Of a stretch of DNA of 64,000 nt, positions 1,160-46,560 are shown in pieces (position 1 is the first letter of the stretch; every line of letters starts with the position of its first letter). This DNA comes from Mobula birostris (lineage: Eukaryota). The position numbers and the translations under genes were made by a program. The stretch is from NCBI RefSeq assembly GCF_030028105.1, contig NC_092374.1:178708057-178772056 (forward strand), written 5' to 3'. The notes under the pieces are model-generated. The model saw only the letters and a program-made list of their open reading frames with translations, was not told the origin of the DNA and ran no database searches.

Positions 1160-1235
1160 ATGGAGAGTTGGAACGGACCGGGATCGCTCCTTTTCACCAT
1201 ATTGTCTCTTTGCTCAGTTGCGGGAAGCCAGGCAG
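1160..1235 (+). pseudogene. Locus A leader exon MESWNGPGSLLFTILSLCSVAGSQA(G)
   Basis: Intact ATG, 76 nt as in locus B, phase-1 donor CAG|GTAAGG. Confidence 0.85.

Positions 1236-1609: not shown

Positions 1610-1610
<1 letters not shown>

Positions 1611-1672
<62 letters not shown>
1611..1672. repeat. (AC)31 microsatellite
   Basis: Directly visible perfect dinucleotide run. Confidence 0.97.
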
Positions 1673-1673
<1 letters not shown>

Positions 1674-6010: not shown

Positions 6011-6883
6011 TGATGCTCAACAGCTGTTTTAATTTGATGCAAACTGCGTTCAAAAGTTCTAAAGGACACTTAATGTCAGAGAACTATTACAATATACATC
6101 CTGAAATGCTTTTTCTTTGCACCTATCCACAAAAACAGAGGAGTACCCCAAAGAATGAACAACAGTTAAATGTCAGAACCCCAAAGTCCCCCTCAGCTCC
6201 CCTCCTTCCCGCACATCAGCGGCAGCAAGCAACAATCCCCCCTTCCCCCCACCGGCAAAAAAAACATCTGCATCCACCACCGTGCACTCGAGCGTGAACA
6301 AGACAACAGTAAAGACAAAGACTTGCAGTGCAGTACTCCAAAGACTACGTTGTTCACCCAGCATTTGACATACCACAGGCTCTCTATCTCCCTAATAAAG
6401 GAGAAAGAGATGTCTCTGTTTCACTGCGAGAGGGGAGATAGAACAAACAACTCTCTAGTTTACGACGTTAAAAGTCCTTTGCGTTTCTTTTTTATGAGCT
6501 CTATGCCCAAAGATCTCAGGGCTCTGGGCACACAGCCATAGATCTTCCAGCTCTCCTGATGACACACGGATCTCCTGCCGTGACACCGACTTTCGATCCG
6601 CCGCTCTCCAGAGCCCTGAGATCCTAGGCCTCTAAAGACAAGCTGAAATCTTAGGCTGGAGCCCTTGGCGTGCCGAACAGCGGCCAGTTGTGAAACCCGA
6701 GAATGGGTCCCTCTCCCGCAAAGAACCATAGTCAGCATGTAACTGCAGGTCAGGGTCTTCAAAAGGACCCTGAAAGGGAAAAATAAGAGATATTAAAGAT
6801 GGAAATACTGTAGAGCTGTTTCCGAAGATGCAAACAAAGGAGTCACGTTAGGCGCCATATTTTCCTATGTTTGAAAGTGTATG

Positions 6884-8092: not shown

Positions 8093-8981
8093 TATGTGTT
8101 AAATAAGGCTTCATTTTAAAAATATTTTATTTGCTTTATTCACTCGTGGACGTGGATTCACAAAGTGAACCACTGTTTAATTCCCCAACCCAAGATGTCC
8201 TTGAGAAGGTGGCTGGTTGCTGCCTTTTTGACCTGGTGCTGTACTCGAGCTGTGGATATATCCACAATGGTGTTCAGGTCCAGATAGTACTAAGTCTATG
8301 CTCTCTCAATTTTGGACAAGCCCTCAGGTAGTCAGTGTCAAGAGTTGTTGCTACATCCTCACAGCACAGAAGCAGGCACTTAGACCCAACAGGTCTACGT
8401 CAGCCAAGATTACCATCCAACTTGGCTCATTTGACTCATATCCCTCTAAACATTTCCTATCTGTGTACCTATCCAAGCATCTTCAATGATGGTACCCAAG
8501 TTGCTCAATAGTTTGGAGGATTGAGAACCTTCATTTTCCATCCCCACTGCAGTTGGGTTCTTCTATCCAGAGCTGCTTGGGATTTATTCCTGGCTGATGC
8601 AATGAGGCCTGTTTTAGTGGTGGTGGTTCCACGTGGATGGGGAGCCAATCACTGGGGTGAGGTCAGTGTCTAATCTGTGTGCCTGTGCATTAATTTGGGC
8701 AAGTGGAGAGTTTTCCACCAGACCTTTGAGTTGTGCCTTATAAACGGAGGGCATCCTTAGTTATTTTCTCACACTCCTCTCTCACTCTCTTCTTTTGTTC
8801 AGTCTCCCTTGAGCTGGGGAGATGATTTCGGGCAGGATAGTGATTAATGGTGAGGTAGGTCCTGGTCTGAGGCAGGAAAGAGTAAGAATCCCACTCTAGG
8901 ACACTGTAACTTCCATTTGTAATGGTAAGATAATATAAGTTTGTGTTGACTTAGTGACGTTAATTCTTCATTCTTCCCCTG

Positions 8982-9256
8982 TTGCTCCAGAGGTTCAGGT
9001 GTTGAAAAAGAGGCCAACAGCTACTGAGGGCGAGAGTCTGTCATGCATCATCACTCCCTTCTACCCCCGTGCTATCAACGCCACTTGGCTGAGGAATGGA
9101 CAGGTTGTCTCCAAGGGCTACGAGGTGACCGTGCTACCAAACTACAATGATACATACTGGATGGAACTAGTCATTGAGCTGCAGGATAATGATACGAACA
9201 TCTATACCTGTCATGTCAAGCACAGCAGCCTGCCGGGGCACTGATGGTGCAGGGAA
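8982..9256 (+). pseudogene. Locus A alpha3 (Ig-C1) exon
   Basis: 73 of 85 aa identical to locus B alpha3 up to HSSLP. 275 nt versus 276 nt, so the 3' end is frameshifted. Confidence 0.9.
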
Positions 9257-10689
9257 GTAGGTCATCGTACGGTACAGAATTTGCTTCATTCTGTTGTGGT
9301 GGTTCATAAATTCATACAGTACTGAAGGAGGCCATTTGGCTCACCACATACATGCTGACCCTCTGGTGCCAGTCTATTCCAACCAGTACTTGGTCTGTAC
9401 TTCGGCCTTCTCTTCCTCAATGATTCAAGTGCTTGTCAGAATTATGATATGAAAATTGTTCTTTTGCAACAGCAGTACAGTGCAAAGACATAAAAGGTGT
9501 ATGAGCTTAGAACATGGACCAACTCATGAAATTATGATACTATAGTTATTAGTGAGATTTGCTAGCTGGAGGGAAGACTGCCAGCCCAAGGTGTGTGGAT
9601 GAGAAGAGTATGTAGGTCTAGACCCAGGTGTGGATTGAAGGGAATAAGCAGAATGGCATTTTGATGGACTATATGGGCCAAATGGACTGCTTCTGTGCTG
9701 TAGTGCTCCATGACTGAAAAATAACATGTTATAAAATAAAGTAATTAGTGCAAAAATTGGAATAATGGGGTTGTGTTCATGGGTTCATGACCATTCATGA
9801 ATGGTAGAAGAAAAGAATATGTTTCTGATTAGTGTCTTCTTTGTGAGTCCTGTATCTTTTCCCTGATTGCATTAAAGGAGAAGAGGGCATGTCCCAGATG
9901 GCAAGGGTCCTGAGTACTGGATGCCACCTTCTTGAAGCACTACCGCTTGAAGATGTCTTCGGTGGTGGGGTGGTTTCTGCCCATGATGGAGCTGACTGTG
10001 TCAACAATTCTCTGCAGCTTCTTATACTTCGTAGATATCAAAATAATTTTTAAACGCTGTGAGAATGTCTGCCTATACCAGCCCCTTAGGCAGAGCATTC
10101 CCATCTCCCACTAACCCATTAGTTAAAAAAAAATCTTCTCTCTATTCTCTCTAAATCTCTTAATCCTTGCCTTAAACCTACCTCTACAGTAATAAGCAAC
10201 TCTGCTATGGGGAAAAGTTTGCTGCTGTTTTATAAAAGAAATTAAGCAGGAGCAGTATACAAACTACTGCAGTAAAAAAAAGCTTTGTTCCTTCAGCATT
10301 TTGTACATTTTTCCTTTCAATGCCCCTAACAATTTTGTATAATGCCATCAGCTTCTCTCACAACCTCCTCCCATTCAGGGAAATCAAACCCAGCCTCTTC
10401 ACTGAAACACTGCATCCCAATAAATTCCTGGTGAATCTCCTGTGTACTCTGTCCCATGCAATCAAATTGTTCCTCTGGGCTGGTGACTGAAAATGTATCA
10501 AATACTTGGGATGTAGCCTAGGTAATGTTTTGTAAAGCTGTACCATAATTTCCTTGGTCTTGTATTCTGTGCCCACATTAATGAACACTCGTACCCTGTA
10601 CACTTTGTTCACCACTATACCTACCTCTTTGAATGACCTGATGATGTATCTCCTCAGTAAAGCTGTACCAGAGCTTCACAGGTCACCAA

Positions 10690-10940
10690 GGTAGTGTAGT
10701 TCAGAGTTCAGTTCCAATACCCTCTGTAAGAGTTTGTATGTTCTCTCCATGAACTGCCTGGATATCCTCTGGGTGCGCCGGTTTCCTCCCATAGTCCACA
10801 GACGTACCAGCTAGTGGGTTAATTTGTCATTGTAAATTGCCCTATGATGAGGCTGGTGTTAAATAGGGGGGTTGTTGGGTGGTGCAGTGCATTGGTCCAG
10901 CAGGGGCTGATCTGAACAGTATCTCTAAATAAAACAAATT
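10690..10940 (+). mobile_element. V-SINE-like element
   Basis: GAGTTTGTATGTTCTCTCC...GGTTTCCTCCCATAGTCCACAGACGT core, ending CTAAATAAAAC. Confidence 0.6.
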
Positions 10941-11142
10941 ATATCTCATGCCCTGATTAATAAATCCTGTAGGCTTTCTTTACCACCCTGTCTACCACTT
11001 TGAAAGAGCTGATCAAGTAGCTCCATTCTTCTCTTACACGCCTCTGAACGTTTCTTTCTTCAAAAAACATGTCCCATGTCCTTGCTGAAAGTTATTGTTT
11101 GCAAGTTGCAGTATCTTCAGATTTTCTCTTCTTTGTGTTCAG

Positions 11143-11186
11143 TCGTAACAAGCAATTATGAGTTGTGGGCCAAAGAAACATAATAG
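11143..11186 (+). pseudogene. Locus A copy of the candidate alternative exon: xVTSNYELWAKET**
   Basis: Acceptor ttttctcttctttgtgttcag|TC, phase 1, 12 codons, then TAA TAG. Confidence 0.42.
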
Positions 11187-11294
11187 ACACTCAAGGAAAG
11201 AAACAGCTGAGAAGCAATTGGGCCTGTGGGTCAAGGCCTGACTGTCCAATGGCCACTACCTGGCTGAGAAATGACTGATATTCAGAGAAGTCAT

Positions 11295-11600
11295 AGAAAC
11301 ATAGAAAATAGGTGCAGGAGTAGGCCATTCGGCCCTTCGAGCCTGCACCGCCATTCAGTATTATCATGGCTGATCATCCAACTCTGAATCCTGCACCAGC
11401 CTTCCCTCCATACCCCCTGATCCCTTTAGCCACAAGGGCCATATCTAACTCCCTCTTAAATATAACCAATGAACTGGCCTCAACTGTTTCCTGTGGCAGA
11501 GAATTCCACAGATTCACCACCCTCTGTGTGAAGAAGTTTTTCCTAATCTCAGTCCTAAAAGGCTTCCCCTTTATCCTAAGACTGTGACCCCTCGTTCTGG
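11295..11600 (-). mobile_element. CR1 LINE 3' end
   Basis: SRTRGHSLRIKGKPFRTEIRKNFFTQRVVNLWNSLP with a (TTCTATGT)n-type tail. Confidence 0.85.
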
Positions 11601-12540
11601 AACTGTGACTCCTCGTCATAGACCCTTACTGCACAAAAACAGGCCCATCTGCACAACTGGTCTATGCCAACCAAGATTCCTACCATGGCCCATATACTAC
11701 CAAACATTTCCTGTCTATCTACTGGTTCCAGTGATTTTTTAAAAAATGTTGTTAATGTACCTGCCAAAACCACTTTCTCTTGCATCTCCTTCCTTGTGCT
11801 GGCAACTTCTGCTTGAGAATGTTGGTCCTCAGGTCTCTATTATATTTTTCCCTAATCACCTTAAACCTTTGTCCTAAAGTTCCTGATGCCCAAATCCTGG
11901 GAAAGAGATTGTGCATTCATCCTCTCTATGCTCTTTATGATTTTATACGTTATTCTATATATCTCAACCTCTTACATTCAAGGGAAAATAATGCCAAGCT
12001 ATGCTACTTCCCCTTCTAATTCAAGTGTACCTTTCTTGGCAACATCCTTGAGAATATTTTGTACACCTTTTCCAGTTTAATGACTTCCTTCCTTTGTCAA
12101 TATGCATAAGATCACCCCATTCTCCTCAGCTCCAGTGAATAAGACATCGCCCGCACCATACATGCTTTCTTCTTCCCCCATCTTCTGCTGAGCAGAAGGT
12201 ACGAAAGCCTGAAAGCACACACTGATGATCAAGGACAGCTTCTATTTTGCTGTTATAACAGTATTGTAGAGTTCCATAGTACGGCACGTTTAACCTTTGA
12301 TGTCACGATCAACCATATTGTGGCCCTTGCTCCTTATTGTGTGCCTGCTCTCTACTTCCTCTGTAACTGTTACAAGTTGCTTTGCATTCTGTTATTTTTG
12401 CCCCTTGTATTATCTCAATGTGCAATTGTAATGCAATTATCTGTGGATGGCATGCAGTACAAAGATTTTTCAGTGTACCTTGGTACATGTGACAACAATT
12501 TAAAATAGTACCAATTTACCAATCTTTACTTGGTGAGTGG

Positions 12541-12653
12541 GAGCCGGGGAGCCTCGTGGTGCAGGTCCTTTGCTGGGGCTGATGGCGACACTTACGATGA
12601 TGATTAAAGTGGTGTAGAGGAGCAGCAAGGAGAGAGTCAAGGTTTTAATACAG
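12541..12653 (+). pseudogene. Locus A tail exon GAGEPRGAGPLLGLMATLTMMIKVV*
   Basis: 113 nt as in locus B, TAG at 12615-12617 in the same position, donor CAG|GTGAGT intact, acceptor mutated to GG. Confidence 0.8.
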
Positions 12654-12738
12654 GTGAGTAAACACGCAGGTTCTTTCACTAATCCTGCTTGCTGTCACAG
12701 TATTGCTCAACCAATCTCTTCTCGTTTTCCTTTTGCAG

Positions 12739-13300
12739 ATGAGTGTTTGGCCCAAATCTCAAGCTCAGCTCTGAACACAAGCTGGATCCTCTGCCTGGTT
12801 TTGTGATTAATGGTTCAACACCAAAGCAAGCTTAGTGTTGGCTCCAGTGTGGGAAATGTTTAGCTGAATCTTCTGCCACTTTACAGCTCGTCTGTTTTGC
12901 AATGTTATAACTTTTTCTTACATCTCACTCAGCGATCAGGTTTCAGTGTTGTGGTGTGTTGAAGTTTCAACTTCTCATTCGTAAAGCCCTACTTGACCTG
13001 AATAGCTCTTCCCAACCCTAACGCCAATGCAATACTGTATATCAGACCATTGGTGTGAGGAACTACTGCAAAGGCAAGTTGGTGGGATAAAGCAGTGAAA
13101 GATTTACTGGGCATTTGGAAAGACCTGAATGGAAGAGTGAATTCCTGTTGTGAACTCCGGATACCTAAGAAGAATTCTTCCCTTAATATGAGATTGGGAG
13201 GGTCCAACATTTTCTTTAAAATAGGAACAGAAACCCCTGGATATTGGTGCAATTTGGGTTGACGTAGAGTTAAAAATTAATCTGAGGTTCATAGAGTGGT
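12739..13300 (+). pseudogene. Locus A terminal 3'UTR exon
   Basis: Acceptor tcgttttccttttgcag|AT after an 85-nt intron; aligns with the locus B 3'UTR. Confidence 0.6.
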
Positions 13301-23779: not shown

Positions 23780-25080
23780 TAAATACGCAAGCAACAAATA
23801 CAGTACTGAGAACATAAGATGGAGGGACCTTGAAAGTGAGTTCATAGGTTGTGTGAACAGTTCAGTCATGGAGTGAGGGAAGATATCCCTTCCGGTTTAA
23901 AAGCCGAATAGTTGAGGGGTAGTGACTGTTTCTGAAGCTGGTGGTGAAAACCCTGAGGCTCCTGTACATTCTTGCTGATGGCAGCAGAGAGCAGAGAGCA
24001 AGGCCTGGGTGGTGGGCATCCTTGATGATGGATGCTGCTTTCCTGCAGCAGCTCACCATGTAGTTGTGCTCACTGGTACAGAGGGCTTTAACCGTGATGG
24101 ACTAGGCTGCATCCACTATTTGTTTGTAGGATTTTCCATTCAAGGGCATTAGTGTTTCCATAATAGGCTGTAATGCAGCCAGTCAATGTACCCTCCACCA
24201 TCCAACTGCAAATGTTTATCAATGTTTTAGATTTTATGCCAAATCTTCACAAAATTAAGGAAGTAATGGCACTTACTGCAAGACCCAGGACAGATCATCT
24301 GAAATAATAGCACCGAGGAATTTAAAGTCTCTCCACATCTTATCCCCCGATGAGGACTGGCTCATAGAGCTCTGGTTTCTTCCTCCTGAAGTCAATAATC
24401 AGCCCCTTGATCTTGCTGACATTGAGTAAGAAATTGTTGTTGTGGTGCCACTCTGCTAGATTTTCAATCTGCCTCCTACATGCTAATTCATCACTGCCTT
24501 TGATTCAGCCAACAAACTTACATATGGCATTGGAGCTGTGCATAGCCGCACAGCCAAAAGTAAAAAGCAAGTACAGCAGGGTGCCCTGCACATAGCCTTG
24601 TGGTGTATCTGTGCTGATGGACATGTTGCTGGCAATCTGAACTGACTGGTGTTTACATGCCAGGAAATTGAGGATCCAATTGCACACGGAGATATTCAGG
24701 CCAAGTTCTTGAAGCTTATTGATTACTTTGGAGGGAGTGATACAATTAAATGCCTATAAAGAGTATTGTGATGTATGCACCTTTGCTGTCCTGATGTTCC
24801 AGGGTTGAGTGAAGAGCCAATGAAATGGCATCTGCTGTGGACCTGTTGTGAAGGTGTGCAAATTGGAATGGATCCAAGATGTTTCTCAGACATGAGTTGA
24901 TATGTTTCATCAGTAACCTCTCAAAATACATCATCTCAGTGGATGTAGGTGCTACAGGATGATGGTCACTGGGGCAGGTTACCACATTCTTCTTTGGCAC
25001 CGGTGTGACTGAAGCCTGCTTGAAGCAGATGGGTACCTCAGACTGCTGAAGTGAGAGGTTAAAGCTTTAAGTGAACACTC
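23780..25080 (-). mobile_element. Rex1/Babar-like LINE RT and 3' fragment
   Basis: LDPFQFAHLHNRSTADAISLALHSTLEH; CCRKAASIIKDAHHPG. Confidence 0.85.
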
Positions 25081-26697
25081 CAGCGACATGATCATCAGAG
25101 GTCTTCAGTACTCGGCCAGGTGCCCCATCGGGGCTGGATGCTCTCTTGTGGGTCAACTTTCTGATGAATGCTCTCACAGCAGGTCTGTGACCCTCTTCAC
25201 GTGCACTTCTCAGGAATGGAATTCATTCATGATCCGTGTGGTATCTTTGTCGTGAAGCTGTGCAACATAGAAGGAACAATAGTATGGAACGTAGCATCTT
25301 CTGTGCTGAGTCTTCAATGTACAGACAGAGGGCAACAGCCAGAGTGTGTCGTGGTTTCTCGTTTCTCACAAATGACAAGGAGACGCAGAAAACTCATCAA
25401 GGTGTTTTAAACTTTAATTTGCAAATCAAAGCTGAGACAGTCAGAAAGCTAGTAATAGTGAACAGGTCAAAGTCATGGCTACATGGTGAATACTTTCTAT
25501 TGAGCTAGCAGTGGTTACATAGTAAATATAGAAAATACAATGTGTGCATTTGAGTAAATACTGATATACTATTGAGTAAATACTGTAATACATAGAAAAT
25601 ACAATGCATGCGTTTACATTTTCCAATAAGTGCTGCACTGCTGGGCTCAGTCCTAAGAATGCCGCACGCAGAGGCCAGTGTTGAGGGAGTGTTGCATTGT
25701 CAGCTGGCAATATTACCCTGTCAGGGGGGCAGGACTGAGGAAACATTGTAACATTTGAAAGAGTAATACTAAGCAAGTGCTCCACTGTAACAGGACATTC
25801 CAAGGAAGTGCTGTAACAGCAGAGGTGTACACTGAGACAGTTAAAGGGAGATACTGAGAGACTGTGCTACCGGAAAGATTAATTTTAAGGAAGCACTGAA
25901 AGAGAGATATTGAGGTAGAACTGTTCTGTTGAGAGACAGTGAAAAGGAAGCACTGTGCAACTGGAGAGGTTGTGCCAGTCTCCACTGTTGTAACTAAGGT
26001 TCTGATTCACTTTAAGAAGTGGATTATCTGAAGAAGGACCATTGCTGAGGGGCTGCTATAGTGTCGAAGGTGCAATGCTTGGGAGCATTGTGCCCCTGGA
26101 GAGCGCATGTTTAGAGACTCAGTCTTGTGAAAACGTTACGGTATCGCATGTCTACATCTTTGGAGGGTCTGTGCTGATCATGGATTATAAATTCATTATT
26201 GTGTTCATTTTTGGCCACTTCATTACAGGAAGGATGTAGAAGCTTTAGATAGGGTGCAGTGGAGATTTACCAGGATGCTGCCTGGATTAGTGAGTATGTC
26301 TTATGAAGATATGTTCAGTGAGCTAGGGCTTTTCTCTTTGAAGCAAAGAAGGATGAGAGGTGACTTGACAGAGATATAAAGATGGTAAGAGGCATAAGAA
26401 AAATAGATTGAGTGGATAGCCAGAGTTTTCCCATGGTGGAAATGGCTAATATGAGGGGGAATAATTTGAAGATGATTAGAAGAAACTATAGAGGGATGTC
26501 AGAAGAAAGTTTTTTTTTTACAGTGTGATTGGTGCATTTAATATTTGACATTTCTAGTCTGTGAAAGAAACTGACTATCCCATCTCTATATGTCTCTCAG
26601 GATTATATAAATCTCTATCAGGTCTGCCCTCAACGTCTAATGGTCCAGAGAAAACAATATGAGTTTGCCCAACCATACAACAGGGAAAGTAACAATA

Positions 26698-26703
26698 TTT
26701 ATT
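26698..26703 (-). terminator. Candidate polyadenylation signal AATAAA of locus B
   Basis: AATAAA lies at the end of the block homologous between paralogs; the aligned site in locus A reads TGTAAA. Confidence 0.5.
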
Positions 26704-27109
26704 CCATTGTATAATCCTCAAATTTTGTACTCTCTCATTCACCAAATTGCCACAGCATCCCAGAGTTTCTGCTCATATTATAAACTAAATGTTGGACTCT
26801 GCCAATCACCAATGAAGAAAAGAATTACTCTTGGCTGTCCAGTGTTCAAAACAGGCATTCATACTTCAGAGCAACAATTTGACATATGGCATTTGTGGTG
26901 GAATTAGGACTGGAGAGAGCAATCAACTCAAGTGGGACCTTACAAATGAGAGTCAAGCATCAGTGCACTGCAAGACTGAAAATTGAAATCTTTCTCAGAT
27001 GTAAGAAAAAAATCTAAAACATAGCTAAACGGGAGTTGGTCAAAGCAGCAGAAGATTCAGCCAGCAAGTTCCCACAGTGGATGCAACACTAAACCTATCT
27101 TCATAAAGA

Positions 27110-27727
27110 TCAGAAGTGGAGAGAATGAGCAATTTCAAGTTCCTGGGTGTCAACATCTCTGAGGATGCAGCTATAAAGAAGCCAAGACAGCAGTATATTT
27201 CATTGGGAGGTTGAGGTGATTTTGTTGGTCAACTAAAACACTTGAGAACTTCTACAAATGTACGATGGAGAACATTCTGACTGGCTGCATCACCATCTGT
27301 TATGAGGGACTACTGGACAAGATTGAAATAAATTGCAGAAACTTGTAAAATTAGTCAGATCTATCAGGGGTACCAGCCTCCATAGTATCCAAAATATCTT
27401 CAAGGAGCGATGCCTTAGGAAGGCTACATCCACCACCACCCAGGACATGCCCTCTTCACACTGGAGCCATCAGGAAGGAGGCACAGAAGCCTTGGCACAG
27501 CTTCTTCCCCTCTGCCAGCTGATTTATCAATGGACATTGAACCCATGAACACCACTTCCTACTTCTTTTATTTCTGTTATCTTGCACTACTTAGTTTAAC
27601 TTACAGCCATAAATATACTTTACGTAACTCAGTTTTTTATTTATTGTCAATTTCATTGTACTGCTGCCGTAAAGTTAACAAATCTCACGAACTATGCCAG
27701 TGATATTAAATCTGATTCTGATTCTAA
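27110..27727 (+). mobile_element. Rex1/Babar-like 3' fragment inside the locus B 3'UTR
   Basis: KERCLRKA-like remnant and a TCTGATTCTGATTCT tail; absent from the aligned locus A UTR. Confidence 0.7.
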
Positions 27728-27910
27728 GCTTGCTGAGGTGTGCGGTCACTCATCAAAAAAACCTGTTTGAAGCTGCACCCTGTGTTCAGAACTGTGCTTG
27801 AGTTAGAGCCAAATGCTGATCTGCAAAGGAGAAAAGAGAGGAGATTGAATGTACAGTCTAATACTGTGACAGCAAGCAGGTTTAACAAAGGCATCTGTAC
27901 GTTTACCCAC

Positions 27911-28023
27911 CTCCAGTGACGCTTTGGTTCTCTCCTTGCTGCACCTCTACATCACTCCAAAGATTATCGCAAACACAGTCATCAGCCCCAACATAGGACC
28001 TGCACCATGGGGCTCACCAACTC
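27911..28023 (-). CDS. Locus B exon 5, C-terminal tail GVGEPHGAGPMLGLMTVFAIIFGVM* plus 36 nt of 3'UTR
   Basis: Acceptor gaacag|GA GTT, TAG at 27949-27947, donor GAG|GTGGGT. Colinear and indel-free against 12541-12653. Confidence 0.8.
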
Positions 28024-31000
28024 CTGTTCACCAAGTAAAGATGGGTAAATTTATAAATTATTTTATTATTGTCACCAGTTACCAGGTACAGTGGAAATAC
28101 ATGTTTTGCATTCTGTCCATACAAATCACTACATCAGGATATTAAGGTTGTACAAGGGAAAATAATAACAGAATGCAGAGTAATGTATTAATTTTACAGA
28201 GGATGTGTGGTGCTGGCTGGCAATAGGATGCAAGACCATTAAAAGTTAGATTGTGAGGTCAGATGCCTATCTTACTATGTTTGGGTCCACTCAATTTTCT
28301 CACAGGAGAAAGACAGAAGTGTTCATTGATCATAGCAGTACATGCCTTCAGGCTTTTGTATCTGTGCCTGATGGGAGCTGGGAGAAGCGGGGGTGGGGGA
28401 GGGGTGGGTGCCGGGGAGGGTAGTCCTGGGTGGGTAGTATCTTATATATTGGAGGATAGGAGAATGGAAGGTGTTTTGAGGAAGGAAGGATGTCATTAGG
28501 ATGGAAAGGATGCAGAGGAGATTCACAAGGATGGTGCCAGGAATGGAATGCTTGAGAAATAAGGAGAGACAAGATAGGCTGGGATTATTTTCCCTGGAGT
28601 GTAGGCGGCTGAATTATAGAGAGAGGTATATAAAATTTTGAGGGGCATAGAGAGAGTGCACAGTAATTTTTCTGGGCTCCTGATGGTATAGGTTTAAGTT
28701 AAGAGAGAAAAGATGTAACAGGAACCTGATGGTCAATTTATGTGTGCCAGAAGAAGTGGTTGAGGCAGACAAGTTAGCATCTTTTAAAAGGTACATCCAC
28801 CAGTACATGGGTCTAAAGGGTTTATGGAGATACGGGCCAGGATAAATGGGACTTCTTTGAACGGGAATCTTGATTGACAAAGGCGTGTTGGGCTGAAGGG
28901 CCTATTTCTCTGCTGCAGAATTCTACGAGTCTATGACAATCAAACACCCAACAGCCAGGCAGTGACCACTTGACAGTCAGGTCTTCCCCACAGTCCCAAT
29001 TGCTTCTTAGCTGTTCTTTCTATTGAGTTCTTACTATATTTCTTTGACCAACTGCTCAACTGCTTCTGTAACATCTGGTGAGCAGAAGGAACAGATTTAA
29101 TTCGAGTGATAATAGAGCACAGTAAATAATAACTTCCAAAATGGAAATAGGATATGTTCTTGGAATTAAGAAATTTTCAGAGGTGTGTGAGAAGGAGTGG
29201 GGCTACTTGAGCAAGTCATTCAAAGTAGAGGACAAGGTGGTGAAGATAGCCTACAGGATGCTGGATTTCATTGATCAGGGCATAGAATTCAAGAGAAGGG
29301 AACTTATGGTGCAGCTTTATGGTGGAGATTCTTGATTAGGTCTTTCAAAGAGGTAAATAGGGTGGTGAAGGAAGTGTATGAGATACCAATTATCAGTGCA
29401 TAGAATACAAGGGCATGGGAATTATGGTACAGCTTTATAAAACATCGGTGAGGCTACATTCTGAGTATTGTTTACAGTTCTGGTCACCAGAGCAGAGGAG
29501 AGATGTGATTGCATTGGACAGAGTGCGGAGGAGATTCGCCGGAATGTGTCTCAGATGAAATGGGAAGAGAGAATAGATACGCTGGTTTTGTTTTCCTTAG
29601 ATGGGAGGACACTGAGAGTGGACCTGATGGAGTTATACAGAATTATTAGGGGTGTAGATAGGAAACACATAGAAAATGCTGGAAGAATTTTTTAAAATAT
29701 ATGTTATTTCTGTTATTGCACTATTTTAAAATCTGTTCAATATACATATATATAATTACTGTAGTTGATTTACTTACTTGTTTTATATTTTTTCTACATT
29801 ATCATGCATTGCTTTGTTTTGCTGCTGCTAAGTTAACAATTTTCACAACAGATGCCAGCAACAATAAACCTGATTCTGATTCTGAAGAATGCTACAGGTT
29901 TTACTTGCTGCAGTTTATGCTTCCACTTCATGTGTTTGCTTGAACGGTAGTAAACAATGACCTACCTCCCTTCACCATCATGACCTCTGGCAGGCTGCTG
30001 TGCTCGACATGACAAGCATAGATGTTCATATCATTATCCTGCAGCTCAATGACTAGTTCCATCCAGTATGTATCATTGTAGTTTGGTAGCACAGTCACCT
30101 TGTAGCCCTCAGAGACAACCTGTCCATTCTTCAGCCAAGTAGCGTTGATAGCTCGGGGATAGAAGGGCGTGATGATGCACGACAGACTCTCGCCTTCAGT
30201 AGCTGTTGGCCTCCTTGTCAACACATGAGCCTTTGGAGTAACTGGGGAAGAATCAAAAATTATGTCACCACCTCAACACAGGCTGATGATACCTTACCGT
30301 TACAGACTGAAGTTACAGTGTTCAATGTTGGGATTACTCTCACATCCTTCACTGCCTCAGAATGTGATCTGCCTCACTATTACACTCACCATCTAATCTG
30401 AAATCAGCCTCCCCAACCCAAGCTCATGCAGACTACAGACAGAGATTACGTTCATTCATCGGACAGGTCCAGATCAAGGTCACAGGCACTGTTCCCAGTC
30501 CAACTGTCATGCAATATCCCAAATTCAGATCATCCTCAAACTGCAAGATGGAGAATGCCCTCAGCACAGCAGTGGTGATCAGAAGGTCCCTCACTGCCCC
30601 AGACCGGGAGATCAGTCAATGTCTCCATTTGGGAGCACCCTCACTCAAAGATTCAAAGTAGATTAATTACCAAAGTGTTTATACAGAATACAACTCTGAG
30701 GTTTATCCTCCGATGCAGCAAAGGAACAAAGAGGCACCAAGGAACCCGTTCAAAGAAAACATCAAACACCCAACATGCAGAGAGAGAACAGATTGCACAA
30801 ACAGCAAAAAGTGAGCTAGCAACACAGAGGATATCAAACATCCAAGCAGGGGTATTTTTGTTCTTAATTGTCCATTCCTTATCTGTTAGGGCATCATAGT
30901 GTAGTGAGAATGACTCCAGGGGCAGTGTCTCATACTGTGTGTGAGATGTGAGTATTCTGGGAGACGTGCAGTCTCTCGGATAAACACATCTGCACCAGGT

Positions 31001-34000: not shown

Positions 34001-37000
34001 ATTATAACATTATGGTGGCACAGGCAATAAACAGACAAATATCTGTGGCGTGTAAGAATGGAACAGCGGTTATCATGGGGGACTTTAACTTGGGTATAGA
34101 TTGGGTGAATCAAGTTGATGAAGGCAGTCTTAAGGTGGATTTGATAGAATGCATCCATGATGGCTTTCTTGAACAGCATGTCACTAAACCTACAAATCTT
34201 AGATCTGGTCCTGTGCAATGATCAGGTAAAATAAGTGATCTTGTAGTTAGGGATCCTCCTGGAGAGAGTGATCACAGTGTGATTGAGTTTCTCGTACAAA
34301 TGGAGGGCGCAATAGTTCGATAGAAAACTAGTGTATTACTGTATGCCTAAACAGTGGAGACGACAATGGGATGAGGGAGGATTTGGCTTGTGTAGACTGG
34401 GAACACAGACTATATGGTGGGACGGTTGAGGAACAGTGGAAGACTTTAAAAGAGATTTTTCACGGTGTTCAACAGAAGTATATTCCAGTTAAAAGTGGGG
34501 AGCAAGTAAATAAGCAAGGGTGGGAAATGAAAGAAAGCATCAAACTAAAAGCTCGTTTGTACAAACTTGTCAAGAGTAGTGGGAAAATGCTAGATTGAGA
34601 AAACTTTAAAAAGCAACATAGAACCACTAAGCGAGCAGTGAAGGAAGGGAAGATAGACTATGAAAATAAACTAGCACAAAATATAAAAGCAGATCATAAA
34701 AGTTGTTATAATTATATAAAGCAGAAAAGGGTGGCTTAAGTGAACATTGGTCCCTTGGAAGACGAGAAGGGGAATTAATATTGGGGAGTGAGGAAATGGC
34801 AGAGGCTTTAGATCTATGTTGTGTCGGTCTTCACAGTGGAGGTGGCGGGCACGTCTAACATGCCAAAGACAGATGTTATGGACGCAATGGGAGGCAAGAA
34901 CCTGATACAATAGCTATCACTAAAGAGGTAGTGCTGAGCAATCGTGTGGGCCGGAAGATAGATAAGTCCCAGGGTACTGAAAGAAATGGCAGAAGTTATA
35001 GTAGAGGTTTTGGTGATAATTTACCAAAATAGAACAATAGAGTTGGGGCTAATGTATTAGCATGGATAGAGGATTGGTTGACTAATAGAAAGAAGAGAGT
35101 TGGGATACTTGGGTGTTTCTCTGGTTGGCAGTCAGTGGTGAGTGGTGTGCCATTGGAGTCTGTGCTAGGGCTGCAACTGTTCATGATATACATTAACGAT
35201 CTGGGAGGGTTTCTGAGTGTAGTGTATCTAAGTTTTCATAAGGTATGGAAGCATCCGGAACCTTGTCAATAACATCTAAGCAGGAACTCCTGACTCCTGA
35301 AAACTGCTGAATTGCATGTATTTTAAGGTGTAAAAGACCATGCTTGTGCTCACTTTAGCAGAGTCTTTTAGTGGGCTCTCCATGGTCATGTAAGTAAGTA
35401 ATTAAACTGAATACTGGGGTCTTTGTCCTTGTTTAATCAGCAATAGTAAATTTCTGTGACACTCAGAGTAGAGGGGCATCCTTTTAAAAAGGAGATCAGG
35501 AAATATTTCTTGAGCCAGAGAGCAGTACATATGTGGAATTCGTTGTTACAGGCAACTTGGCAGCTGTGGAGGCCACATCTTTAGTATATTTAAAGCAAAG
35601 ATTGATAGATTCTTTATAGTCACGACATGAAGCGATATGGGGAGAAGGCAGGACGTTGGAGCTGTGAGGGATAATGGACCAGCATGATGAAATGGCGGAG
35701 CAGACTCGATGGGCCAAATGGCCCCATTCTGCTTCTATATCTTATGGTTTTATCAAGTCTAGATGTACTCAGTTTAGTTCAGTGCCTTGCCACTAGCCAA
35801 AAGCAGGCCGCAGATTCAGTCTTCGCTGAAGCACCCAGTGCGCACTGATGCACCCTGATCAAACCACTTAGAAACAGGAAACAAAGGGAAACCAGAATCC
35901 AGAAATACATGAACCCTAAAGTCCCCCAAAAAGAGTCACAACCATGAGCCTCACCAATCAACCCCTGCAATGTGGAACCCAAGCCTCCTGCACTTTCCTC
36001 CAACAGCAGCTAGTAAAAGGGGGAGGAATACCAGCCAAACGCGGCAGATGGCGCCAAACACCAGCCTGGCCTCCGCACTTGGCCTCGTCCACTTCAACCT
36101 TGCTCAACGCCTCAGTCAGAGAGAAGCAATGGAGCCAATCATGGGCTCATAGTCCACCTCCAGGCCTGTAGGCCGTACACTCCAATCAACTCACTGTTTC
36201 AAATTAGGAGATCCCTCATTACTGCAGATTGGAACCCCCTAACCATTTTGTTTTGGGAGCTCCCTCTCTTTCCCATATGAGGAGATCCCTCTGCATCTCT
36301 GATTGGAAGCTTCCTTACTGTCCAGACCTGGAGATCCCTCTCTGTCCCAGATTGGGAACACCATCAATTTGTTAGATCATCAAATCCTTCAGTATCCTGA
36401 ATCATAACAGCCCACACCATCTCGGTCTCAGAGCCCCATAATCGTCTCAGACTGAGGTATCCTTTATGTTGCTGAATTGGGAGTTCCCTCTCCATCACAG
36501 GATGTTCCACTTGCCTTGCCTTTCCAATGCTTCTTTTCCAAGCTGAACAGCCCTTTGCAAATACCAAGTGCAGTTATTCTTCAATGCAGTCACGCCAGTG
36601 AAACTGAGTTGGCTCAATTGATCATTGAACATTGCTAGGAAACCAGTGCCAGTGCATTTCAATGTGTTCAAATCACAGCTGAACTCTCCAATATCCGGGA
36701 CGTTGATTTTCAGAATCGCGTTGACCGTATCTCCAGATTGTGTGCAGCCCCAGAGTGCCTGTATGTAGCTGAAGCCTGTAAATTACCAACAGATTAATTA
36801 ACATTAATGGCTGAAGCTTCCAATACTAGCTAATGGTCTGCTAAATACGTAAATGCTATGTGACTAAGAGGTGCACAAAGTAGTGGGTCACGGTCAGCGA
36901 CTGTGTACAGTTAAGGCCGAGAGCATGGGGTGAAGTGTCCTATATAGAACATTTGTCAGTGTGTGGCACAGATCACAGGGTCTGGTGGAATCAGTAATCA

Positions 37001-40000
37001 ATGTGAGCAACTGTCTACACGGCAAGGTGGGAGGGGAAAGTTTAAAGAGATTCAATTTGTCATTAACGAATGGCAATGTTTCCCAATGTGCAGTGAAAAG
37101 CATTCGGATTGGTTACATCACAGCCGGTAAGTAAACTCCAAAGCTCTGAAAGACAAAAGGCTGCAGGGGTGCTGGGCTCAACCAGGCCCATCACAGGTAC
37201 AGCTCTCCCCATCGTTGAGGACATCTGCGAAAGGCAATTTCCCAAAAAGACAACATCCATCATCAGGAGCCACACCCTCCCTATCATCCAGGACATACTC
37301 TCTTCTTGATGCTACCACTAGGAAGGAGGGACAGAGGCCAAAGGACCAACACCTCAGGCTCCAACAAGAGCTCCATGCCCAATACCACCAGGTTCTTTAA
37401 CCAACCAGAAAAGCCTTAACGAGACCCTAGATTATATTCTTCGCTCTTAATCTTGCACAAATATTGTTACATTTATTTTGTTGTATACCTTTTTCCAATT
37501 TCCAATTAACCAATTTCCCCCGGGATCAATAAAGTATGATTACTACTACTAGAACTACGACTACTACTACTACTACTGCTACGACTACTACTACTTTGTA
37601 CATGTGCGGGTTGTACATATTTATTTAAAATTGACTCCATGCTAACATGTCCTGTAATATACCATGCTGCTGCTGTAAGATAGTAATTTTATGGCATTTG
37701 TACCCTGTGTATGTCAGCCTATGTTCAGAAATGAACTTGAGCTTGAACTTATGCGGAGTGCACAGTACAGAGATCACGTTGAAACACTGTGCAGTGCACA
37801 GTACTCTACATACAAAGCAGGGGGCACATTGAAGGACTCTGTCGACATGTGGGTCGGAGCAGGGGCTCACAGTGAGAGACTGCGCTGTACAGTCTGCGCT
37901 GAACCACGTCCACTGCAGAGAGTTACGGCGGAGAATTGTGAAAGCAACGTGTTTGTATTCAGTGTCAATAAGCACAGAGTGTGCAACACAGCAGTTCTGG
38001 TCACTCTGTGACGGTGAGGCTTTGGAGTAGGTGCAGAAGATGCTTACCAGATGCTGCCTGGATTAGACAGCATGTGCAATAACAAGTGATTTGACCAATT
38101 TGGGCTGCTTTCTCTGTTTCAAAGTTGACAGCTGGTATAATTTTACCCTCAGTTGAAATGTCTAATACAAGAGGGCATGGAAAAGGGGATATGTTCAATG
38201 GAGATGTGCAGGGTAAGTCTATTACAGAATGGCGGGTTCCTAAATTGTGCTTCCAGGGGTTGTGGTAGTAGCAGATACAAAGAAGGTGTTCAAGAAGCTT
38301 AGGCGAGCAGGACATGGACATTGTGTAGGCAGAAAGGATGAGATTAGTTTGGCATTTGATTATTAATACAATTAGTTCAGCAGAACATTTTGGGCCAAAG
38401 GGCCTGTTCCTGTGTTGTAGCGTTCTATGTTCTAATGCACAGAGTCCCCGCACCAAATTAGATCTGGAAAGCGTCATTGTGGCAGGTGACTAGATAAGAA
38501 CATGGACATCTTAGTTCCAACCATCCTAGACTGAAGCATCCCCAAGTCTGGAGTTGGGGAGTAGGCTTAGGATTAGGTTTTGAGCCAGGCAAAGCCTGTA
38601 TGGACAGTGGGTTTGATTTTCACTGTTTCTCTGAAGAGCTCATTGGGGAATGAGGACTGGATAATCAGTTTATTTTGAAGGGTCAGAACTTACCCAGATG
38701 ATTAGGATGGAATTCTTGTAATTGGAGTTAAGGAAGGTAGAGAGCAGAATGGAGATTTGAGAGATTTGAAAGAGTGAAGGACTTTAAACTTGATACAACA
38801 TAATCAGATTTAATAGAACATCAAAATATTGGCAATACGCAAGTCACTGTGATACTCAAAGGGTAGTGGAGATCAAAGACACTCAATACCGAATAAGGAT
38901 AATTGCTTCAGATATGTCGAGAGGAGCTCATGAAGCCGATCGGTTATTTCTTTCTGTTCTTTCCAGTAGTCGGTCGATAAGCCATCTGCGATCCACTGGT
39001 ACTTGACTTCTACTTCATGCAGTGTGCTGTCATAGTAGTCTATCTGCAAGTCATCGAGCATCCCAATCCTGAAGAAAGCTGGCATTTCAGGAATACTGAT
39101 GGATTGGAGGTAGTAATACATCAAGCTGTGTGAGCCTGAGTAAAAGGACAGAGAGAGAGGAGTGTCAGAAAACAACAAAGGATGCTCACAATTTATAAGG
39201 CACAACTCGGGAGTTTGATGACATACTCGCCACTTGAATGGATTAATACACATCCAAACAGACATCCTACTGGATCAGGCAGCACTCCCACCCCTCTTTA
39301 TTAGCTCCCCAAACACGAGCAACCAACACTATGAAAACTTGCTTCACTGCTCTGGCTATTTACAAAATCCTAAGCAGATACTCACTGAAGCCAATCCAAC
39401 AGAACGACCCAAACCCCAGCACGAAGGAGGTCAAGGGCAGCAGGGAAACAGGAGCACCAACTCCCACTATAGGGTTGCTTCTAAGTCAGAGGCAAACATA
39501 CTGGAACATAAGTCCACCATGATAGAGAGGAAACCAAGGTTCAAGGAGAAGCAGAAGACATTTCCGGGGCACCAGTGTAGAAATTCTCATCATCGCAGCA
39601 AAGGTGACAGAGAAAGAGGACGGAAAAGGGGTAGTGGAGTCCCACAAGAGGCAGAGTGGGAGGACGAAAAGTAAAGATAGCTGTTGGAGTCTGTAGGTTG
39701 AAAGGACATTTGTGAATGTAGTGAGGGTAGGAAAGACTTAGATATGCCTTGTGTAAGGAGGAGAAAAGGCTAAGAATTGGGAGCAAGGAAAATAATAATT
39801 TCCAGTTCTGTCTGAATGTGGGGAGCAGCACCAATGCAGTGATCAATGTCAAAGGAAAGGAGCTGAGTGATGTAGCCCAAGTGGGACTGAAAGTTAGCAG
39901 TCATTTCAAGAGGACTAGAATATAAAAGCAAATGTGTAATGTTCAGATTTCATGAAGCACTGGTGAGGCCTCATATGGAGTATTGTGAGCAATTCTGGGC

Positions 40001-46000: not shown

Positions 46001-46396
46001 AGACTGAACTAACGTGGCAGTTAAGGAATAGTTAAACTCAGATTAATTGCTTTAATGTGATGCCTCTGTTAAGATTGTGGGACTTTCCTCTTTGGGAACT
46101 GGCGATAGACCCCAAACTACCCACCGCTGAAACATATTCAAGGATCATTTTGTCCCGAGTTTATCGACTTCAGAAATTTCACAAGAGTGAAATCAGAACA
46201 CAGGAGTGCGATGAGTTCGTCCTCCCGCCAAATGGAGCAACTGCCAGGAACTCCAAAAGATTTAAAGGTGAATTTCCCGACACAACCCCCGACCATCGCC
46301 GTCACATACCCTCGCCTCACCTGCCTGTTGTCCCGCGACAGAGCAGAGAGATAACGCGGTGACAAGGAGCGATACCGCTCCGGTCCAGCTCTCCAT
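27947..46396 (-). CDS. Non-classical MHC class I-like heavy chain, locus B; join of 46396-46321, 39135-38890, 36775-36515, 30241-29966, 28023-27947; 311 aa
   Basis: Five exons joined by phase-1 introns give one open frame (76+246+261+276+77 = 936 nt): signal peptide, alpha1 (GSHSLMYYY...DYWKEQ), alpha2 (WGC...NNCTWYLQRAVQLGKEALERQ), Ig-C1 alpha3, hydrophobic tail, stop. Lineage (UBA/UCA/UDA/UEA or new) cannot be assigned without a search. Confidence 0.88.
29031..29074 (-). CDS. Candidate alternative exon in locus B intron 4: (D)VTEAVEQLVKEI**
   Basis: Acceptor ttccttctgctcaccag|AT, phase 1, 12 codons then TAG TAA; overlapping donor ATA|GTAAGA. Same layout as 11143-11186. Confidence 0.45.
29966..30241 (-). 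CDS. Locus B exon 4, Ig-C1 alpha3 domain
   Basis: Acceptor ttcttccccag|TT ACT CCA; 92 codons with LSC-ITPFYP-AI--TW, VLPNYNDTY and YACHVEHSSL; donor GAG|GTAGGT. Confidence 0.93.
30880..35750 (+). mobile_element. Stacked CR1 LINE remnants (SGNH-type ORF1, endonuclease, RT) spanning most of locus B intron 3
   Basis: IAVLMGNSIGRRTETKFCGH...VVCCLP; VTIVMGNFNMQVDWENQ; GCFSGWQSVVSGVPLESVLGLQLFMIYINDL. Confidence 0.85.
36515..36775 (-). CDS. Locus B exon 3, MHC class I alpha2 domain (absent from the ORF track)
   Basis: Acceptor taattttacag|GC TTC; open 87 codons GFSYIQALWGCTQSGDTVNAILKINVPDIGEFSCDLNTLKCTGTGFLAMFNDQLSQLSFTGVTALKNNCTWYLQRAVQLGKEALERQ with C101/C164 equivalents and Q96; phase-1 donor AAG|GCAAGT. 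Confidence 0.88.
37045..37600 (+). mobile_element. Rex1/Babar-like 3' fragment with a (CTA)n tail
   Basis: RPITGTALPIVEDICERQFPKKTTSIIR-HTLP; AATAAAGTATG followed by CTA repeats. Confidence 0.7.
38890..39135 (-). CDS. Locus B exon 2, MHC class I alpha1 domain
   Basis: Acceptor ctctctgtccttttactcag|GC TCA CAC; class I alpha1 motifs SHSL-YY, G-LDD-QIDYYDS and YW. The 3' end uses the phase-1 donor TCG|GTATTG, which is weak and therefore uncertain. An in-frame TGA at 38873-38875 limits the alternatives. Confidence 0.85.
39890..40530 (+). mobile_element. CR1 LINE 3' end
   Basis: RKDVLKLERVQRRFMKMIPGL...KTRGHSFRIEGCPFRTEMRRNFF. Confidence 0.88.
40590..41220 (-). mobile_element. Rex1/Babar-like 3' fragment
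   Basis: VKKAQQHLLHLRRLNKFGM...ESIMTGCIISWYGNC; (CAATT)n tail. Confidence 0.8.
42230..44690 (-). mobile_element. CR1 LINE remnant with a nested Rex1-like fragment (about 43615-43950)
   Basis: LKVDKSPEPDGLCPRILREVAEEI; DTKSFFSYRKSK; the nested piece reads CELPTIQDIYKDRCVKRARRIIRD. Confidence 0.8.
46321..46396 (-). CDS. Locus B exon 1, leader MESWTGAVSLLVTALSLCSVAGQQA(G)
   Basis: ATG at 46396, hydrophobic signal peptide, phase-1 donor CAG|GTGAGG, and clear homology to the locus A leader at 1160-1235. Confidence 0.88.
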
Positions 46397-46560
46397 TGCG
46401 ACAACTCCTCGCATCGACTGAATCCTGATCGTTAGTCAGTGAAGTGCTGAGGGTGGAGTGAGATTCACAGACGCGGCTTGGGGCAAACAGGTGCAGCCAG
46501 GAGTTGAAAATCCTTCTACAGAAATGGACTGTGTGGGCAGCGGAGTGTCGGCTGATCGCG

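What the first reader, a model, noticed from the sequence alone, without database searches (positions are those of the whole stretch)
27947..28023. Shared in-frame stop turns the TM exon into a GPI-anchor-like signal
Locus B ends GVGEPHGAGP-MLGLMTVFAIIFGVM* and locus A ends GAGEPRGAGP-LLGLMATLTMMIKVV*. The TAG is at the identical codon with no indels, so it predates the duplication. A small-residue/Gly-Pro spacer plus a terminal hydrophobic run is the established GPI signal layout. The frame after the stop reads RCSKERTK / RSSKERVK, like a basic stop-transfer segment, so an ancestral TGG(W)>TAG change is a plausible origin (inference).
Basis: partly seen in the sequence, partly recalled or inferred. 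Interest (0 to 1): 0.82.

Follow-up and report, generated by a model that had tools for sequence, protein, structure and literature searches.

The report
GPI-signal-like tail on ray MHC gene
A manta-ray immune "display" gene (a non-classical MHC class I gene of the shark and ray lineage reported to be CD1-like) ends at a stop codon inside its membrane-anchor exon, leaving a short oily tail laid out like a GPI lipid-anchor signal; every shark and ray relative examined ends the same way, but lipid anchoring itself is untested.

Summary
On the minus strand an exon at 28023-27911 carries TAG at 27949-27947. It ends the protein at ...KGGVGEPHGAGP-MLGLMTVFAIIFGVM.

RNA contigs from four runs join the alpha-3 exon to this exon, and this exon to a last exon, at GT..AG sites in the predicted frame. 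No other acceptor or frame was seen.

My exon assembly of the gene (locus B, 46414 to about 27650) equals a 317-aa Mobula birostris RefSeq model exactly.

The window's "locus A" has the same TAG and no indel, but it is a pseudogene. An intact A-type paralog elsewhere ends the same way.

All 25 relatives with a complete C-terminus (five ray genera, seven shark genera and one unlabelled sequence) stop after a tail-less hydrophobic run. That run is 13-15 residues in 23 of them and up to 21 in the skate-type pair. So the feature predates the shark-ray split, not just this duplication.

The layout fits the published GPI-signal pattern: small omega and omega+2 residues (G-V-G), a 9-residue spacer and a 15-residue tail. 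No GPI predictor or experiment was available.

The proposed TGG>TAG origin and "relic stop-transfer" segment are unsupported.

Earlier agents of this scan reached the same reading on paralogs about 212-247 kb away.

The parts
27950..28023 (-). Coding part of the transmembrane-type exon of locus B: G(G)VGEPHGAGP linker/spacer plus the 15-residue hydrophobic end MLGLMTVFAIIFGVM. This is the putative GPI attachment signal, with candidate omega at G293 of the 317-aa protein.
   Evidence: Translation. RNA joint 29966|28023 in 4 runs. Assembly identical to RefSeq model P0157. Rule check.
27947..27949 (-). TAG stop codon, 36 nt upstream of the last exon-exon junction.
   Evidence: It is unchanged in the RNA contigs of a related species (run X2), where the only difference in the exon is 27955 C>T.
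27911..27946 (-). Post-stop remainder of the exon (3' UTR), purine-rich. In frame it would read RCSKERTKASLE.
   Evidence: It is no better conserved between A and B than the introns are.
27821..27910 (-). 90-nt GT..AG intron between the TM exon and the last exon.
   Evidence: RNA joint 27911|27820 in all 4 runs.
27654..27820 (-). Last exon (3' UTR); this is the RNA-supported minimum. AATAAA motifs begin at 27645 and 27572. RNA contigs continue to about 25.6 kb, but that stretch includes repeats.
29966..30241 (-). Alpha-3 (Ig C1-set) exon of locus B, 276 nt, phase 1.
   Evidence: Pfam C1-set 9.6e-15. Splice sites. RNA contig.
36515..36775 (-). Alpha-2 exon of locus B, 261 nt, with a GC donor (GCAAGT).
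   Evidence: Matches alpha-2 of PDB 8gm8_A at 7.2e-11. Boundaries.
38890..39135 (-). Alpha-1 exon of locus B, 246 nt.
   Evidence: Pfam MHC_I 2.8e-07, above the curated cutoff. 8gm8_A 1.9e-16. Boundaries.
46321..46414 (-). Leader (signal peptide) exon of locus B.
   Evidence: tblastn at 100% to P0157 residues 1-32. Donor GTGAGG.
12540..12653 (+). TM-type exon remnant of pseudogene locus A, with TAG at 12615-12617. The canonical acceptor is TGG where locus B has CAG.
8982..9256 (+). Alpha-3 exon remnant of locus A. The acceptor is TG where B has AG, a 1-nt deletion at about 9234 gives a premature TGA, and the last base is A where B has G.
   Evidence: RNA contigs that lie here carry the extra G and about 2% other differences, so they come from a paralog.
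1160..1235 (+). Leader exon of locus A. No alpha-1 or alpha-2 exon follows it within the window.
   Evidence: RefSeq model P0003 splices the leader straight to alpha-3.

Best explanation
Locus B (46414 to about 27650, minus strand) is an intact, transcribed non-classical MHC class I gene of Mobula birostris. It belongs to the elasmobranch lineage whose nurse-shark member is PDB 8gm8, which is probably the lineage the literature calls UFA and describes as CD1-like. Its fifth exon is homologous to a class I transmembrane exon, but translation stops at TAG 27949-27947. The precursor therefore ends in a 15-residue, moderately hydrophobic segment with no basic stop-transfer residues and no cytoplasmic tail.

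Inferred mechanism: after ER import via the leader, this C-terminal peptide is recognised by GPI transamidase. It would be cleaved at a small residue in the conserved G-G-V-G cluster (best candidate G293: omega G, omega+2 G, a 9-residue spacer VGEPHGAGP, then the tail) and replaced by a GPI anchor. The heavy chain would then sit in the outer leaflet without any cytoplasmic sorting motif. The stop lies 36 nt before the last exon junction, which by the usual 50-55-nt rule should spare the mRNA from nonsense-mediated decay.

Shown: gene structure, splicing, frame, transcription, the stop, and its conservation across sharks and rays. Inferred: GPI attachment, the omega position, and the consequences for trafficking.
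For: - Exon, frame and stop.
- RNA contigs in 4 runs from 2 species show GT..AG joints 29966|28023 and 27911|27820, and the stop is retained in the second species.
- The assembled 317-aa protein is identical to RefSeq-derived P0157.
- MHC_I and C1-set domains are present.
- The best solved relative is 8gm8_A at 2.4e-64 over the whole ectodomain.
- All 25 family members with a full C-terminus end tail-less after a hydrophobic run of 13-15 residues (up to 21 in the skate-type pair). They come from Mobula, Hemitrygon, Hypanus, Pristis, Amblyraja, Cetorhinus, Carcharodon, Mustelus, Pristiophorus, Heterodontus, Chiloscyllium and Heptranchias, plus one unlabelled sequence.
- Each has a small/any/small triplet 4-10 residues upstream of the run (7-10 in 23 of the 25). 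Five class I controls with ordinary TM plus tail lack such a tail-less hydrophobic end.
- The published rule is: omega in A/C/D/G/N/S, small omega+2, spacer 8-12, hydrophobic tail 15-20 (PMC9098846).
- A tree built without the C-terminal 27 residues puts all members in one clade, with rays 99/95, A-type 100/100 and B-type 100/99. Parsimony therefore places the tail-less end in the shark-ray ancestor.
Against: - No dedicated GPI predictor (NetGPI, PredGPI, big-PI) could be run, and my rule check is not a validated classifier.
- The tail is at the lower limit (15 residues; 13 in lamniform sharks).
- The hydrophobic segment is unusually well conserved among B-type paralogs for a signal that is discarded, although alpha-3 is equally conserved and gene conversion is likely.
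- No biochemical data exist.
- No paper describing GPI anchoring in this lineage was found, and the key lineage papers were not readable.
Confidence: 0.63

Rival explanations
1. Tail-less peptide anchor. The 16 residues P302-M317 stay attached and act as a short type I transmembrane helix without a cytoplasmic domain, possibly stabilised by a partner membrane protein.
For: The exon is homologous to class I TM exons. The segment is strongly conserved within B-type genes. A-type genes keep a Lys three residues from the end, and some sharks have Arg or Glu near the end, which could act as a membrane-interface anchor.
Against: Fifteen to sixteen residues including two Gly and a Thr is short for a stable span. 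The flanking basic cluster seen in ordinary class I chains (P0099, P0120, P0143) is absent. The conserved small-residue cluster at the correct distance upstream has no role in this model.
Confidence: 0.2
2. Non-functional truncation. The stop is a disabling mutation and the product is secreted, ER-retained or degraded, so the genes are decaying.
For: The window's locus A is indeed a pseudogene. The family is large and turns over quickly.
Against: Every intact relative with a full C-terminus in sharks, skate and rays keeps a tail-less hydrophobic end with open upstream exons. In the 16 manta, devil-ray, stingray and sawfish proteins it falls at the same position. Locus B is spliced and represented in four RNA data sets, and the stop is kept in a second species. 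The nurse-shark member folds and was crystallised (8gm8).
Confidence: 0.07
3. Another splice form bypasses the stop and supplies a normal TM plus cytoplasmic tail, and that form is the main product.
For: Another first-reader note proposes an alternative exon at 29031-29074. A Narcine isoform (P0169) ends in a hydrophilic sequence instead, so alternative 3' ends exist in the family.
Against: All listed gene-related joints use 29966|28023 and 27911|27820. Read-through of the frame would give only 17 more codons. No family protein longer than 321 aa was found, apart from one older Chiloscyllium model (331 aa) that runs on past alpha-3 into unrelated sequence.
Confidence: 0.05

Closest known systems
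Nurse shark non-classical MHC class I chain in PDB 8gm8 (probably the 'UFA' CD1-like lineage mentioned in PMC10751288 and PMC12562908)
   Same: The whole ectodomain aligns at 2.4e-64. It shares the unusual alpha-2 motif YIQ.LW.C and the extra cysteines. In the tree it sits among the shark orthologs.
   Different: The crystallised construct stops after alpha-3, so it says nothing about the anchor. Rays have expanded the lineage into A-type and B-type multigene sets, whereas each shark species gave a single hit in these searches. That 8gm8 is the protein called UFA could not be verified from a paper.
Mouse Qa-2 (Q7/Q9), a GPI-anchored class Ib molecule
   Same: From my own knowledge, not tested here: GPI anchoring results from a premature stop in the transmembrane exon (exon 5), with the downstream exons left as 3' UTR. 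This is the same genetic route to a tail-less hydrophobic end.
   Different: The origin is independent, in a mammalian classical-like lineage. Qa-2 is young and rodent-specific, whereas this feature is shared by sharks and rays.
Mammalian GPI-anchored class I-like NKG2D ligands (ULBP/RAET1 family)
   Same: A class I-like fold attached by GPI (from knowledge). A cluster named 'NKG2D ligand 3' appeared among weak language-model look-alikes of the C-terminal part (score 0.69, a lead only).
   Different: ULBPs lack alpha-3 and beta-2-microglobulin. No sequence relationship was shown.
Mammalian CD1
   Same: The literature reports the shark and ray lineage as lipid-binding and CD1-like (PMC12562908).
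   Different: From knowledge, most CD1 isoforms use a transmembrane segment and a cytoplasmic tyrosine motif for endosomal sorting. This family has no cytoplasmic tail at all.

Membership tests
GPI-anchored protein precursor (C-terminal attachment signal) | N-terminal ER signal peptide | tested here: met
   The leader exon encodes a 31-residue peptide with a hydrophobic core. The mature start GSHSL aligns with residue 1 of the 8gm8 chain. This is by inspection; no SignalP run.
GPI-anchored protein precursor (C-terminal attachment signal) | Small omega residue (A/C/D/G/N/S) with a small omega+2 | tested here: met
   G293-V-G295 in locus B. G-V-G, G-V-S or a similar triplet is present in all 25 relatives. 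Rule from PMC9098846.
GPI-anchored protein precursor (C-terminal attachment signal) | Hydrophilic spacer of about 8-12 residues after omega | tested here: met
   V294-P302 is 9 residues.
GPI-anchored protein precursor (C-terminal attachment signal) | Hydrophobic C-terminal tail of about 15-20 residues with nothing after it | tested here: met
   15 residues, mean Kyte-Doolittle 2.44, then the stop. This is at the lower limit; lamniform sharks have 13.
GPI-anchored protein precursor (C-terminal attachment signal) | Positive call by a trained predictor (NetGPI, PredGPI, big-PI) | not testable with these tools
   None is installed and there is no network.
GPI-anchored protein precursor (C-terminal attachment signal) | Actual GPI attachment (PI-PLC release, dependence on PIG genes) | not testable with these tools
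   This needs an experiment.
MHC class I heavy chain, elasmobranch non-classical 8gm8-type (UFA?) lineage | Alpha-1/alpha-2 MHC_I platform plus a C1-set alpha-3 | tested here: met
   Pfam MHC_I on alpha-1 at 30.7 bits against a cutoff of 28.3, and C1-set at 9.6e-15. Alpha-2 matches only 8gm8 alpha-2, at 7.2e-11.
MHC class I heavy chain, elasmobranch non-classical 8gm8-type (UFA?) lineage | One-domain-per-exon structure with phase-1 boundaries | tested here: met
   Exons of 94/246/261/276/113 nt assemble into the RefSeq protein exactly.
MHC class I heavy chain, elasmobranch non-classical 8gm8-type (UFA?) lineage | Groups with the lineage's shark members to the exclusion of other class I lineages | tested here: met
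   8gm8_A at 2.4e-64 against 1.1e-31 for the next chain. One clade in the tree, with a 9ch4-like outgroup.
MHC class I heavy chain, elasmobranch non-classical 8gm8-type (UFA?) lineage | Formal name UFA and lipid binding | not testable with these tools
   The PDB title gives no lineage name. The lineage papers were not held. The name rests on PMC10751288, PMC12562908 and earlier AI notes.

The most novel reading that the evidence does not exclude
The CD1-like class Ib lineage of sharks and rays has been GPI-anchored since before the shark-ray split (over 250 million years, from general knowledge of that split). That would make it the oldest known lipid-anchored MHC molecule. It would also be a lipid-presenting molecule that works without any cytoplasmic endosomal-sorting motif, and rays have amplified it into two old sub-families that differ mainly in the platform and in the discarded signal.
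Probability: 0.5. Interest if true: 0.6.

Novelty: new member of a known kind. Interest (0 to 1): 0.45.

Why it matters
If the anchor is confirmed, antigen-presenting-type molecules were being tethered by lipid rather than by a peptide span very early in jawed-vertebrate history. The route would be the same as in mouse Qa-2 (a stop inside the TM exon), reached independently.

For a lineage reported to bind lipids like CD1, the absence of a cytoplasmic tail limits where it can load ligand: the secretory pathway, the cell surface or the recycling route, rather than tyrosine-motif-driven lysosomal sorting. It also predicts raft localisation and possible shedding.

The finding also gives expression and structural work on these proteins a concrete construct boundary, near G293.

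Tried and rejected
- Fetching genomic DNA for the shark ortholog P0018, to read its stop codon and post-stop sequence, failed because the sample file was too large. The stop-codon identity and the ancestral codon could therefore not be compared at the DNA level outside the window.
- The two lineage papers, PMC8454915 and PMC7002201, are not held.
- Searches for 8GM8, for shark nonclassical class I plus GPI, for nurse shark CD1-like, and for GPI plus cartilaginous-fish MHC found nothing relevant.
- The supplement of PMC10751288 carries no lineage labels. The Qa-2 paper found holds only an abstract-length text.
- A language-model look-alike search of the last 34 residues gave only weak hits of 0.80 or less.
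- I rejected the idea that the post-stop basic peptide is conserved, because its A/B identity equals that of the introns.
- I rejected locus A as a second working example, because of its multiple lesions. RNA contigs lying on it come from a paralog about 98% identical.
- The first attempt at the representative search failed on frame and was corrected.

Full report
**What is at the coordinates.** The window is vertebrate DNA. On the minus strand, 28027-27900 translates as TGVGEPHGAGPMLGLMTVFAIIFGVM*RCSKERTKASLE. TAG occupies 27949-27947. An AG acceptor lies just upstream of 28023, and a GT donor starts at 27910. A 27-nt probe from the exon finds exactly one other copy, on the plus strand at 12558-12584, against 0 expected by chance. 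Repeat finding shows two inverted, tail-to-tail copies of an alpha-3-to-TM gene segment. The two exons align without gaps, with TAG in the same column.

**The gene.** Stop-to-stop ORFs and tblastn located the other exons of locus B:
- leader 46414-46321
- alpha-1 39135-38890
- alpha-2 36775-36515, with a GC donor
- alpha-3 30241-29966
- TM-type exon 28023-27911
- last exon from 27820

Joined, they give a 317-aa protein identical to P0157, a Mobula birostris RefSeq-derived sequence. Alpha-1 passes Pfam MHC_I and alpha-3 is a C1-set domain. Alpha-2 is recognisable only through PDB 8gm8_A.

The full protein hits 8gm8_A, a nurse-shark "MHC class I protein", at 2.4e-64. The next chain, 9ch4_A, scores 1.1e-31. 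Two papers state that sharks and rays have MHC-linked, CD1-like class Ib lineages called UFA and UGA, with crystal structures that suggest lipid binding (PMC10751288; PMC12562908). This gene evidently belongs to the 8gm8 lineage. I could not verify from a paper that 8gm8 is the protein called UFA. Earlier AI notes of this scan use that name.

**Transcripts.** Logan contigs of four RNA-type runs were laid on 24600-30400. Three runs are from the window's species and one (X2) is from a close relative.
- All four show the joint 29966|28023 (GT..AG once the stated 1-nt ambiguity is resolved) and the joint 27911|27820 (a 90-nt GT..AG intron).
- One 1059-nt contig runs from upstream exons through alpha-3 and the TM exon into the last exon.
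- The frame carried in from alpha-3 gives ...SSLPEVMMVKGGVGEPHGAGPMLGLMTVFAIIFGVM*.
- In the relative, the only change in the exon is 27955 C>T (Val to Met), and TAG is kept.

If the stop were read through, only 17 more codons would follow. The stop lies 36 nt before the last junction, within the distance that by the usual 50-55-nt rule (general knowledge) does not trigger nonsense-mediated decay.

**Locus A.** In this window locus A has a leader (1160-1235) and then nothing homologous to alpha-1 or alpha-2 before alpha-3 at 8982. Compared with locus B it carries four further lesions:
- the alpha-3 acceptor is CTG instead of CAG
- one G is missing from a G-run at about 9234, giving ...LPGH-stop
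- the last alpha-3 base is A instead of G
- the TM-exon acceptor is TGG instead of CAG

The database model for this locus (P0003, 109 aa) is leader plus alpha-3, ending at that premature stop. RNA contigs that lie on locus A at 97% or more carry the missing G and about 2% other differences. They are spliced to give ...VQGGAGEP..., which matches P0154, an intact 315-aa A-type paralog on the same chromosome. Locus A is therefore a pseudogene, but its intact sister gene ends with the identical peptide GAGEPRGAGPLLGLMATLTMMIKVV.

**How old and how general.** A HMMER search of 1.8 billion representatives with alpha-3 and two word-index searches recovered the family:
- five Mobula birostris genes, plus Mobula hypostoma
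- Hemitrygon akajei and Hypanus sabinus (A-type and several B-type genes)
- Pristis pectinata and Amblyraja radiata
- the sharks Cetorhinus, Carcharodon, Mustelus, Pristiophorus, Heterodontus, Chiloscyllium and Heptranchias

Every one of the 25 sequences with a complete C-terminus is 309-321 aa long and stops directly after a hydrophobic run with no cytoplasmic tail. In the 16 manta, devil-ray, stingray and sawfish proteins the end is 15 residues after the Gly-Pro (or Ala-Pro/His-Pro) turn. The same holds in most sharks, while the two lamniforms have 13 and the two skate-type sequences have about 16 after a slightly different spacer. Ordinary class I chains recovered in the same search have spans of 22-24 residues followed by Arg/Lys clusters and tails (P0099, P0120, P0143, P0146).

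An ML tree built after removing the last 27 residues gives these supports:

| Clade | Support (ultrafast bootstrap / SH-aLRT, %) |
|---|---|
| Rays | 99/95 |
| A-type (Mobula, Hemitrygon, Hypanus) | 100/100 |
| B-type | 100/99 |
| Nurse-shark 8gm8 chain with Chiloscyllium | 100/99 |

The A/B duplication is thus older than the manta-stingray split. The tail-less end is older still, and parsimony places it in the common ancestor of sharks and rays.

[quoted passage not shown] Locus B fits with omega G293, omega+2 G295, the 9-residue spacer V294-P302 and a 15-residue tail.

A simple script applied the same logic to all 25 relatives. Each has a small/any/small triplet (mostly G-V-G or G-V-S) before the hydrophobic run, at a distance of 7-10 residues in 23 of them and 4 in the skate-type pair. 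Five control class I chains with tails lack any such tail-less hydrophobic end, although the loose triplet rule alone still fired in two of them. The G-V-[G/S]-E motif aligns between sharks and rays.

This is a rule-of-thumb check, not a trained predictor, and none could be run. On this evidence I rate real GPI anchoring at about 0.63. The main rival, at about 0.2, is a short tail-less peptide anchor.

**The proposed origin.** Between A and B, DNA identity is as follows:

| Segment | A/B identity |
|---|---|
| Upstream intron | 70% |
| Coding part of the exon | 73% |
| Post-stop 36 nt | 72% |
| Downstream intron | 76% |
| Last exon (first 50 nt) | 76% |

The post-stop resemblance is therefore just the background similarity of the two copies. 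A 12-codon open stretch has roughly a 56% chance of occurring anyway. Trp before the basic cluster is common in other class I chains (for example ...YMW-RRR in P0143), so TGG>TAG is possible, but nothing here tests it. The exon is clearly TM-exon-derived in position, phase and size (113 nt).

**Comparison and novelty.** GPI-anchored class I or class I-like molecules are known in mammals (Qa-2, the ULBP family; from my own knowledge). Qa-2 uses the same genetic route. The gene family itself is known and has a solved structure, and RefSeq already models the protein as ending at this stop.

I found no accessible paper that mentions a GPI-type end for this lineage, but the lineage's primary papers were not readable. 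Follow-up agents of this scan reached the same reading for paralogs about 212 and 247 kb upstream in the same genome. I therefore class it as a new member of a known kind and of moderate interest. Its value lies in the great age and complete conservation of the feature, and in what a tail-less anchor implies for trafficking of a supposedly CD1-like molecule.

Noticed in passing
window 1160-12800 (+): Locus A is a multiply disabled copy. Alpha-1 and alpha-2 are missing, two acceptors do not match the AG seen in locus B, a 1-nt deletion gives a premature TGA, and the last alpha-3 base is changed. It is nevertheless modelled in RefSeq as a 109-aa protein named 'class II beta-like'.
   Followed up: yes
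window 8960-9275 vs 29945-30262, compared with 12400-12800 vs 27770-28170: The alpha-3 exon and its immediate flanks are 94% identical between A and B, whereas the TM-exon region is only 70-76% identical. This mosaic similarity suggests gene conversion of alpha-3 between A-type and B-type genes.
   Followed up: partly
window 36509-36514 (-): The intron after the alpha-2 exon of locus B starts with GC (GCAAGT), a non-canonical GC-AG intron. The exon assembly still reproduces the RefSeq protein exactly.
   Followed up: partly
window 11164-11625, 26152-26345 and 27122-27315: RNA-contig word depth is extremely high here (up to about 78,000), as expected for transcribed interspersed repeats. The ORF at 11374-11619 (-) contains the motif FFTQRVVNLWNSLP, which I take from memory to be the end of a retroelement ORF; this was not tested.
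   Followed up: no
window 29031-29074 (-): Another reader proposed an alternative exon here. None of the RNA joints listed (8 further joints were not shown) uses it, and coverage there is low (about 5) and mismatched.
   Followed up: partly
P0169 (Narcine bancroftii isoform X2): One family member's modelled isoform ends in a hydrophilic peptide (...DSNSIEIKQREDVKEAR) instead of the hydrophobic tail. A soluble splice form may therefore exist in this family.
   Followed up: no
window 38890-39135 and 36515-36775 (-): The alpha-1 exon (246 nt) and alpha-2 exon (261 nt) are shorter than I recall for typical class I exons. Alpha-2 carries extra cysteines shared with 8gm8, and alone it matches no Pfam family.
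   Followed up: partly
window ~1590-1700 (+): A (CA)n microsatellite, which translates as a THTH... run.
   Followed up: no
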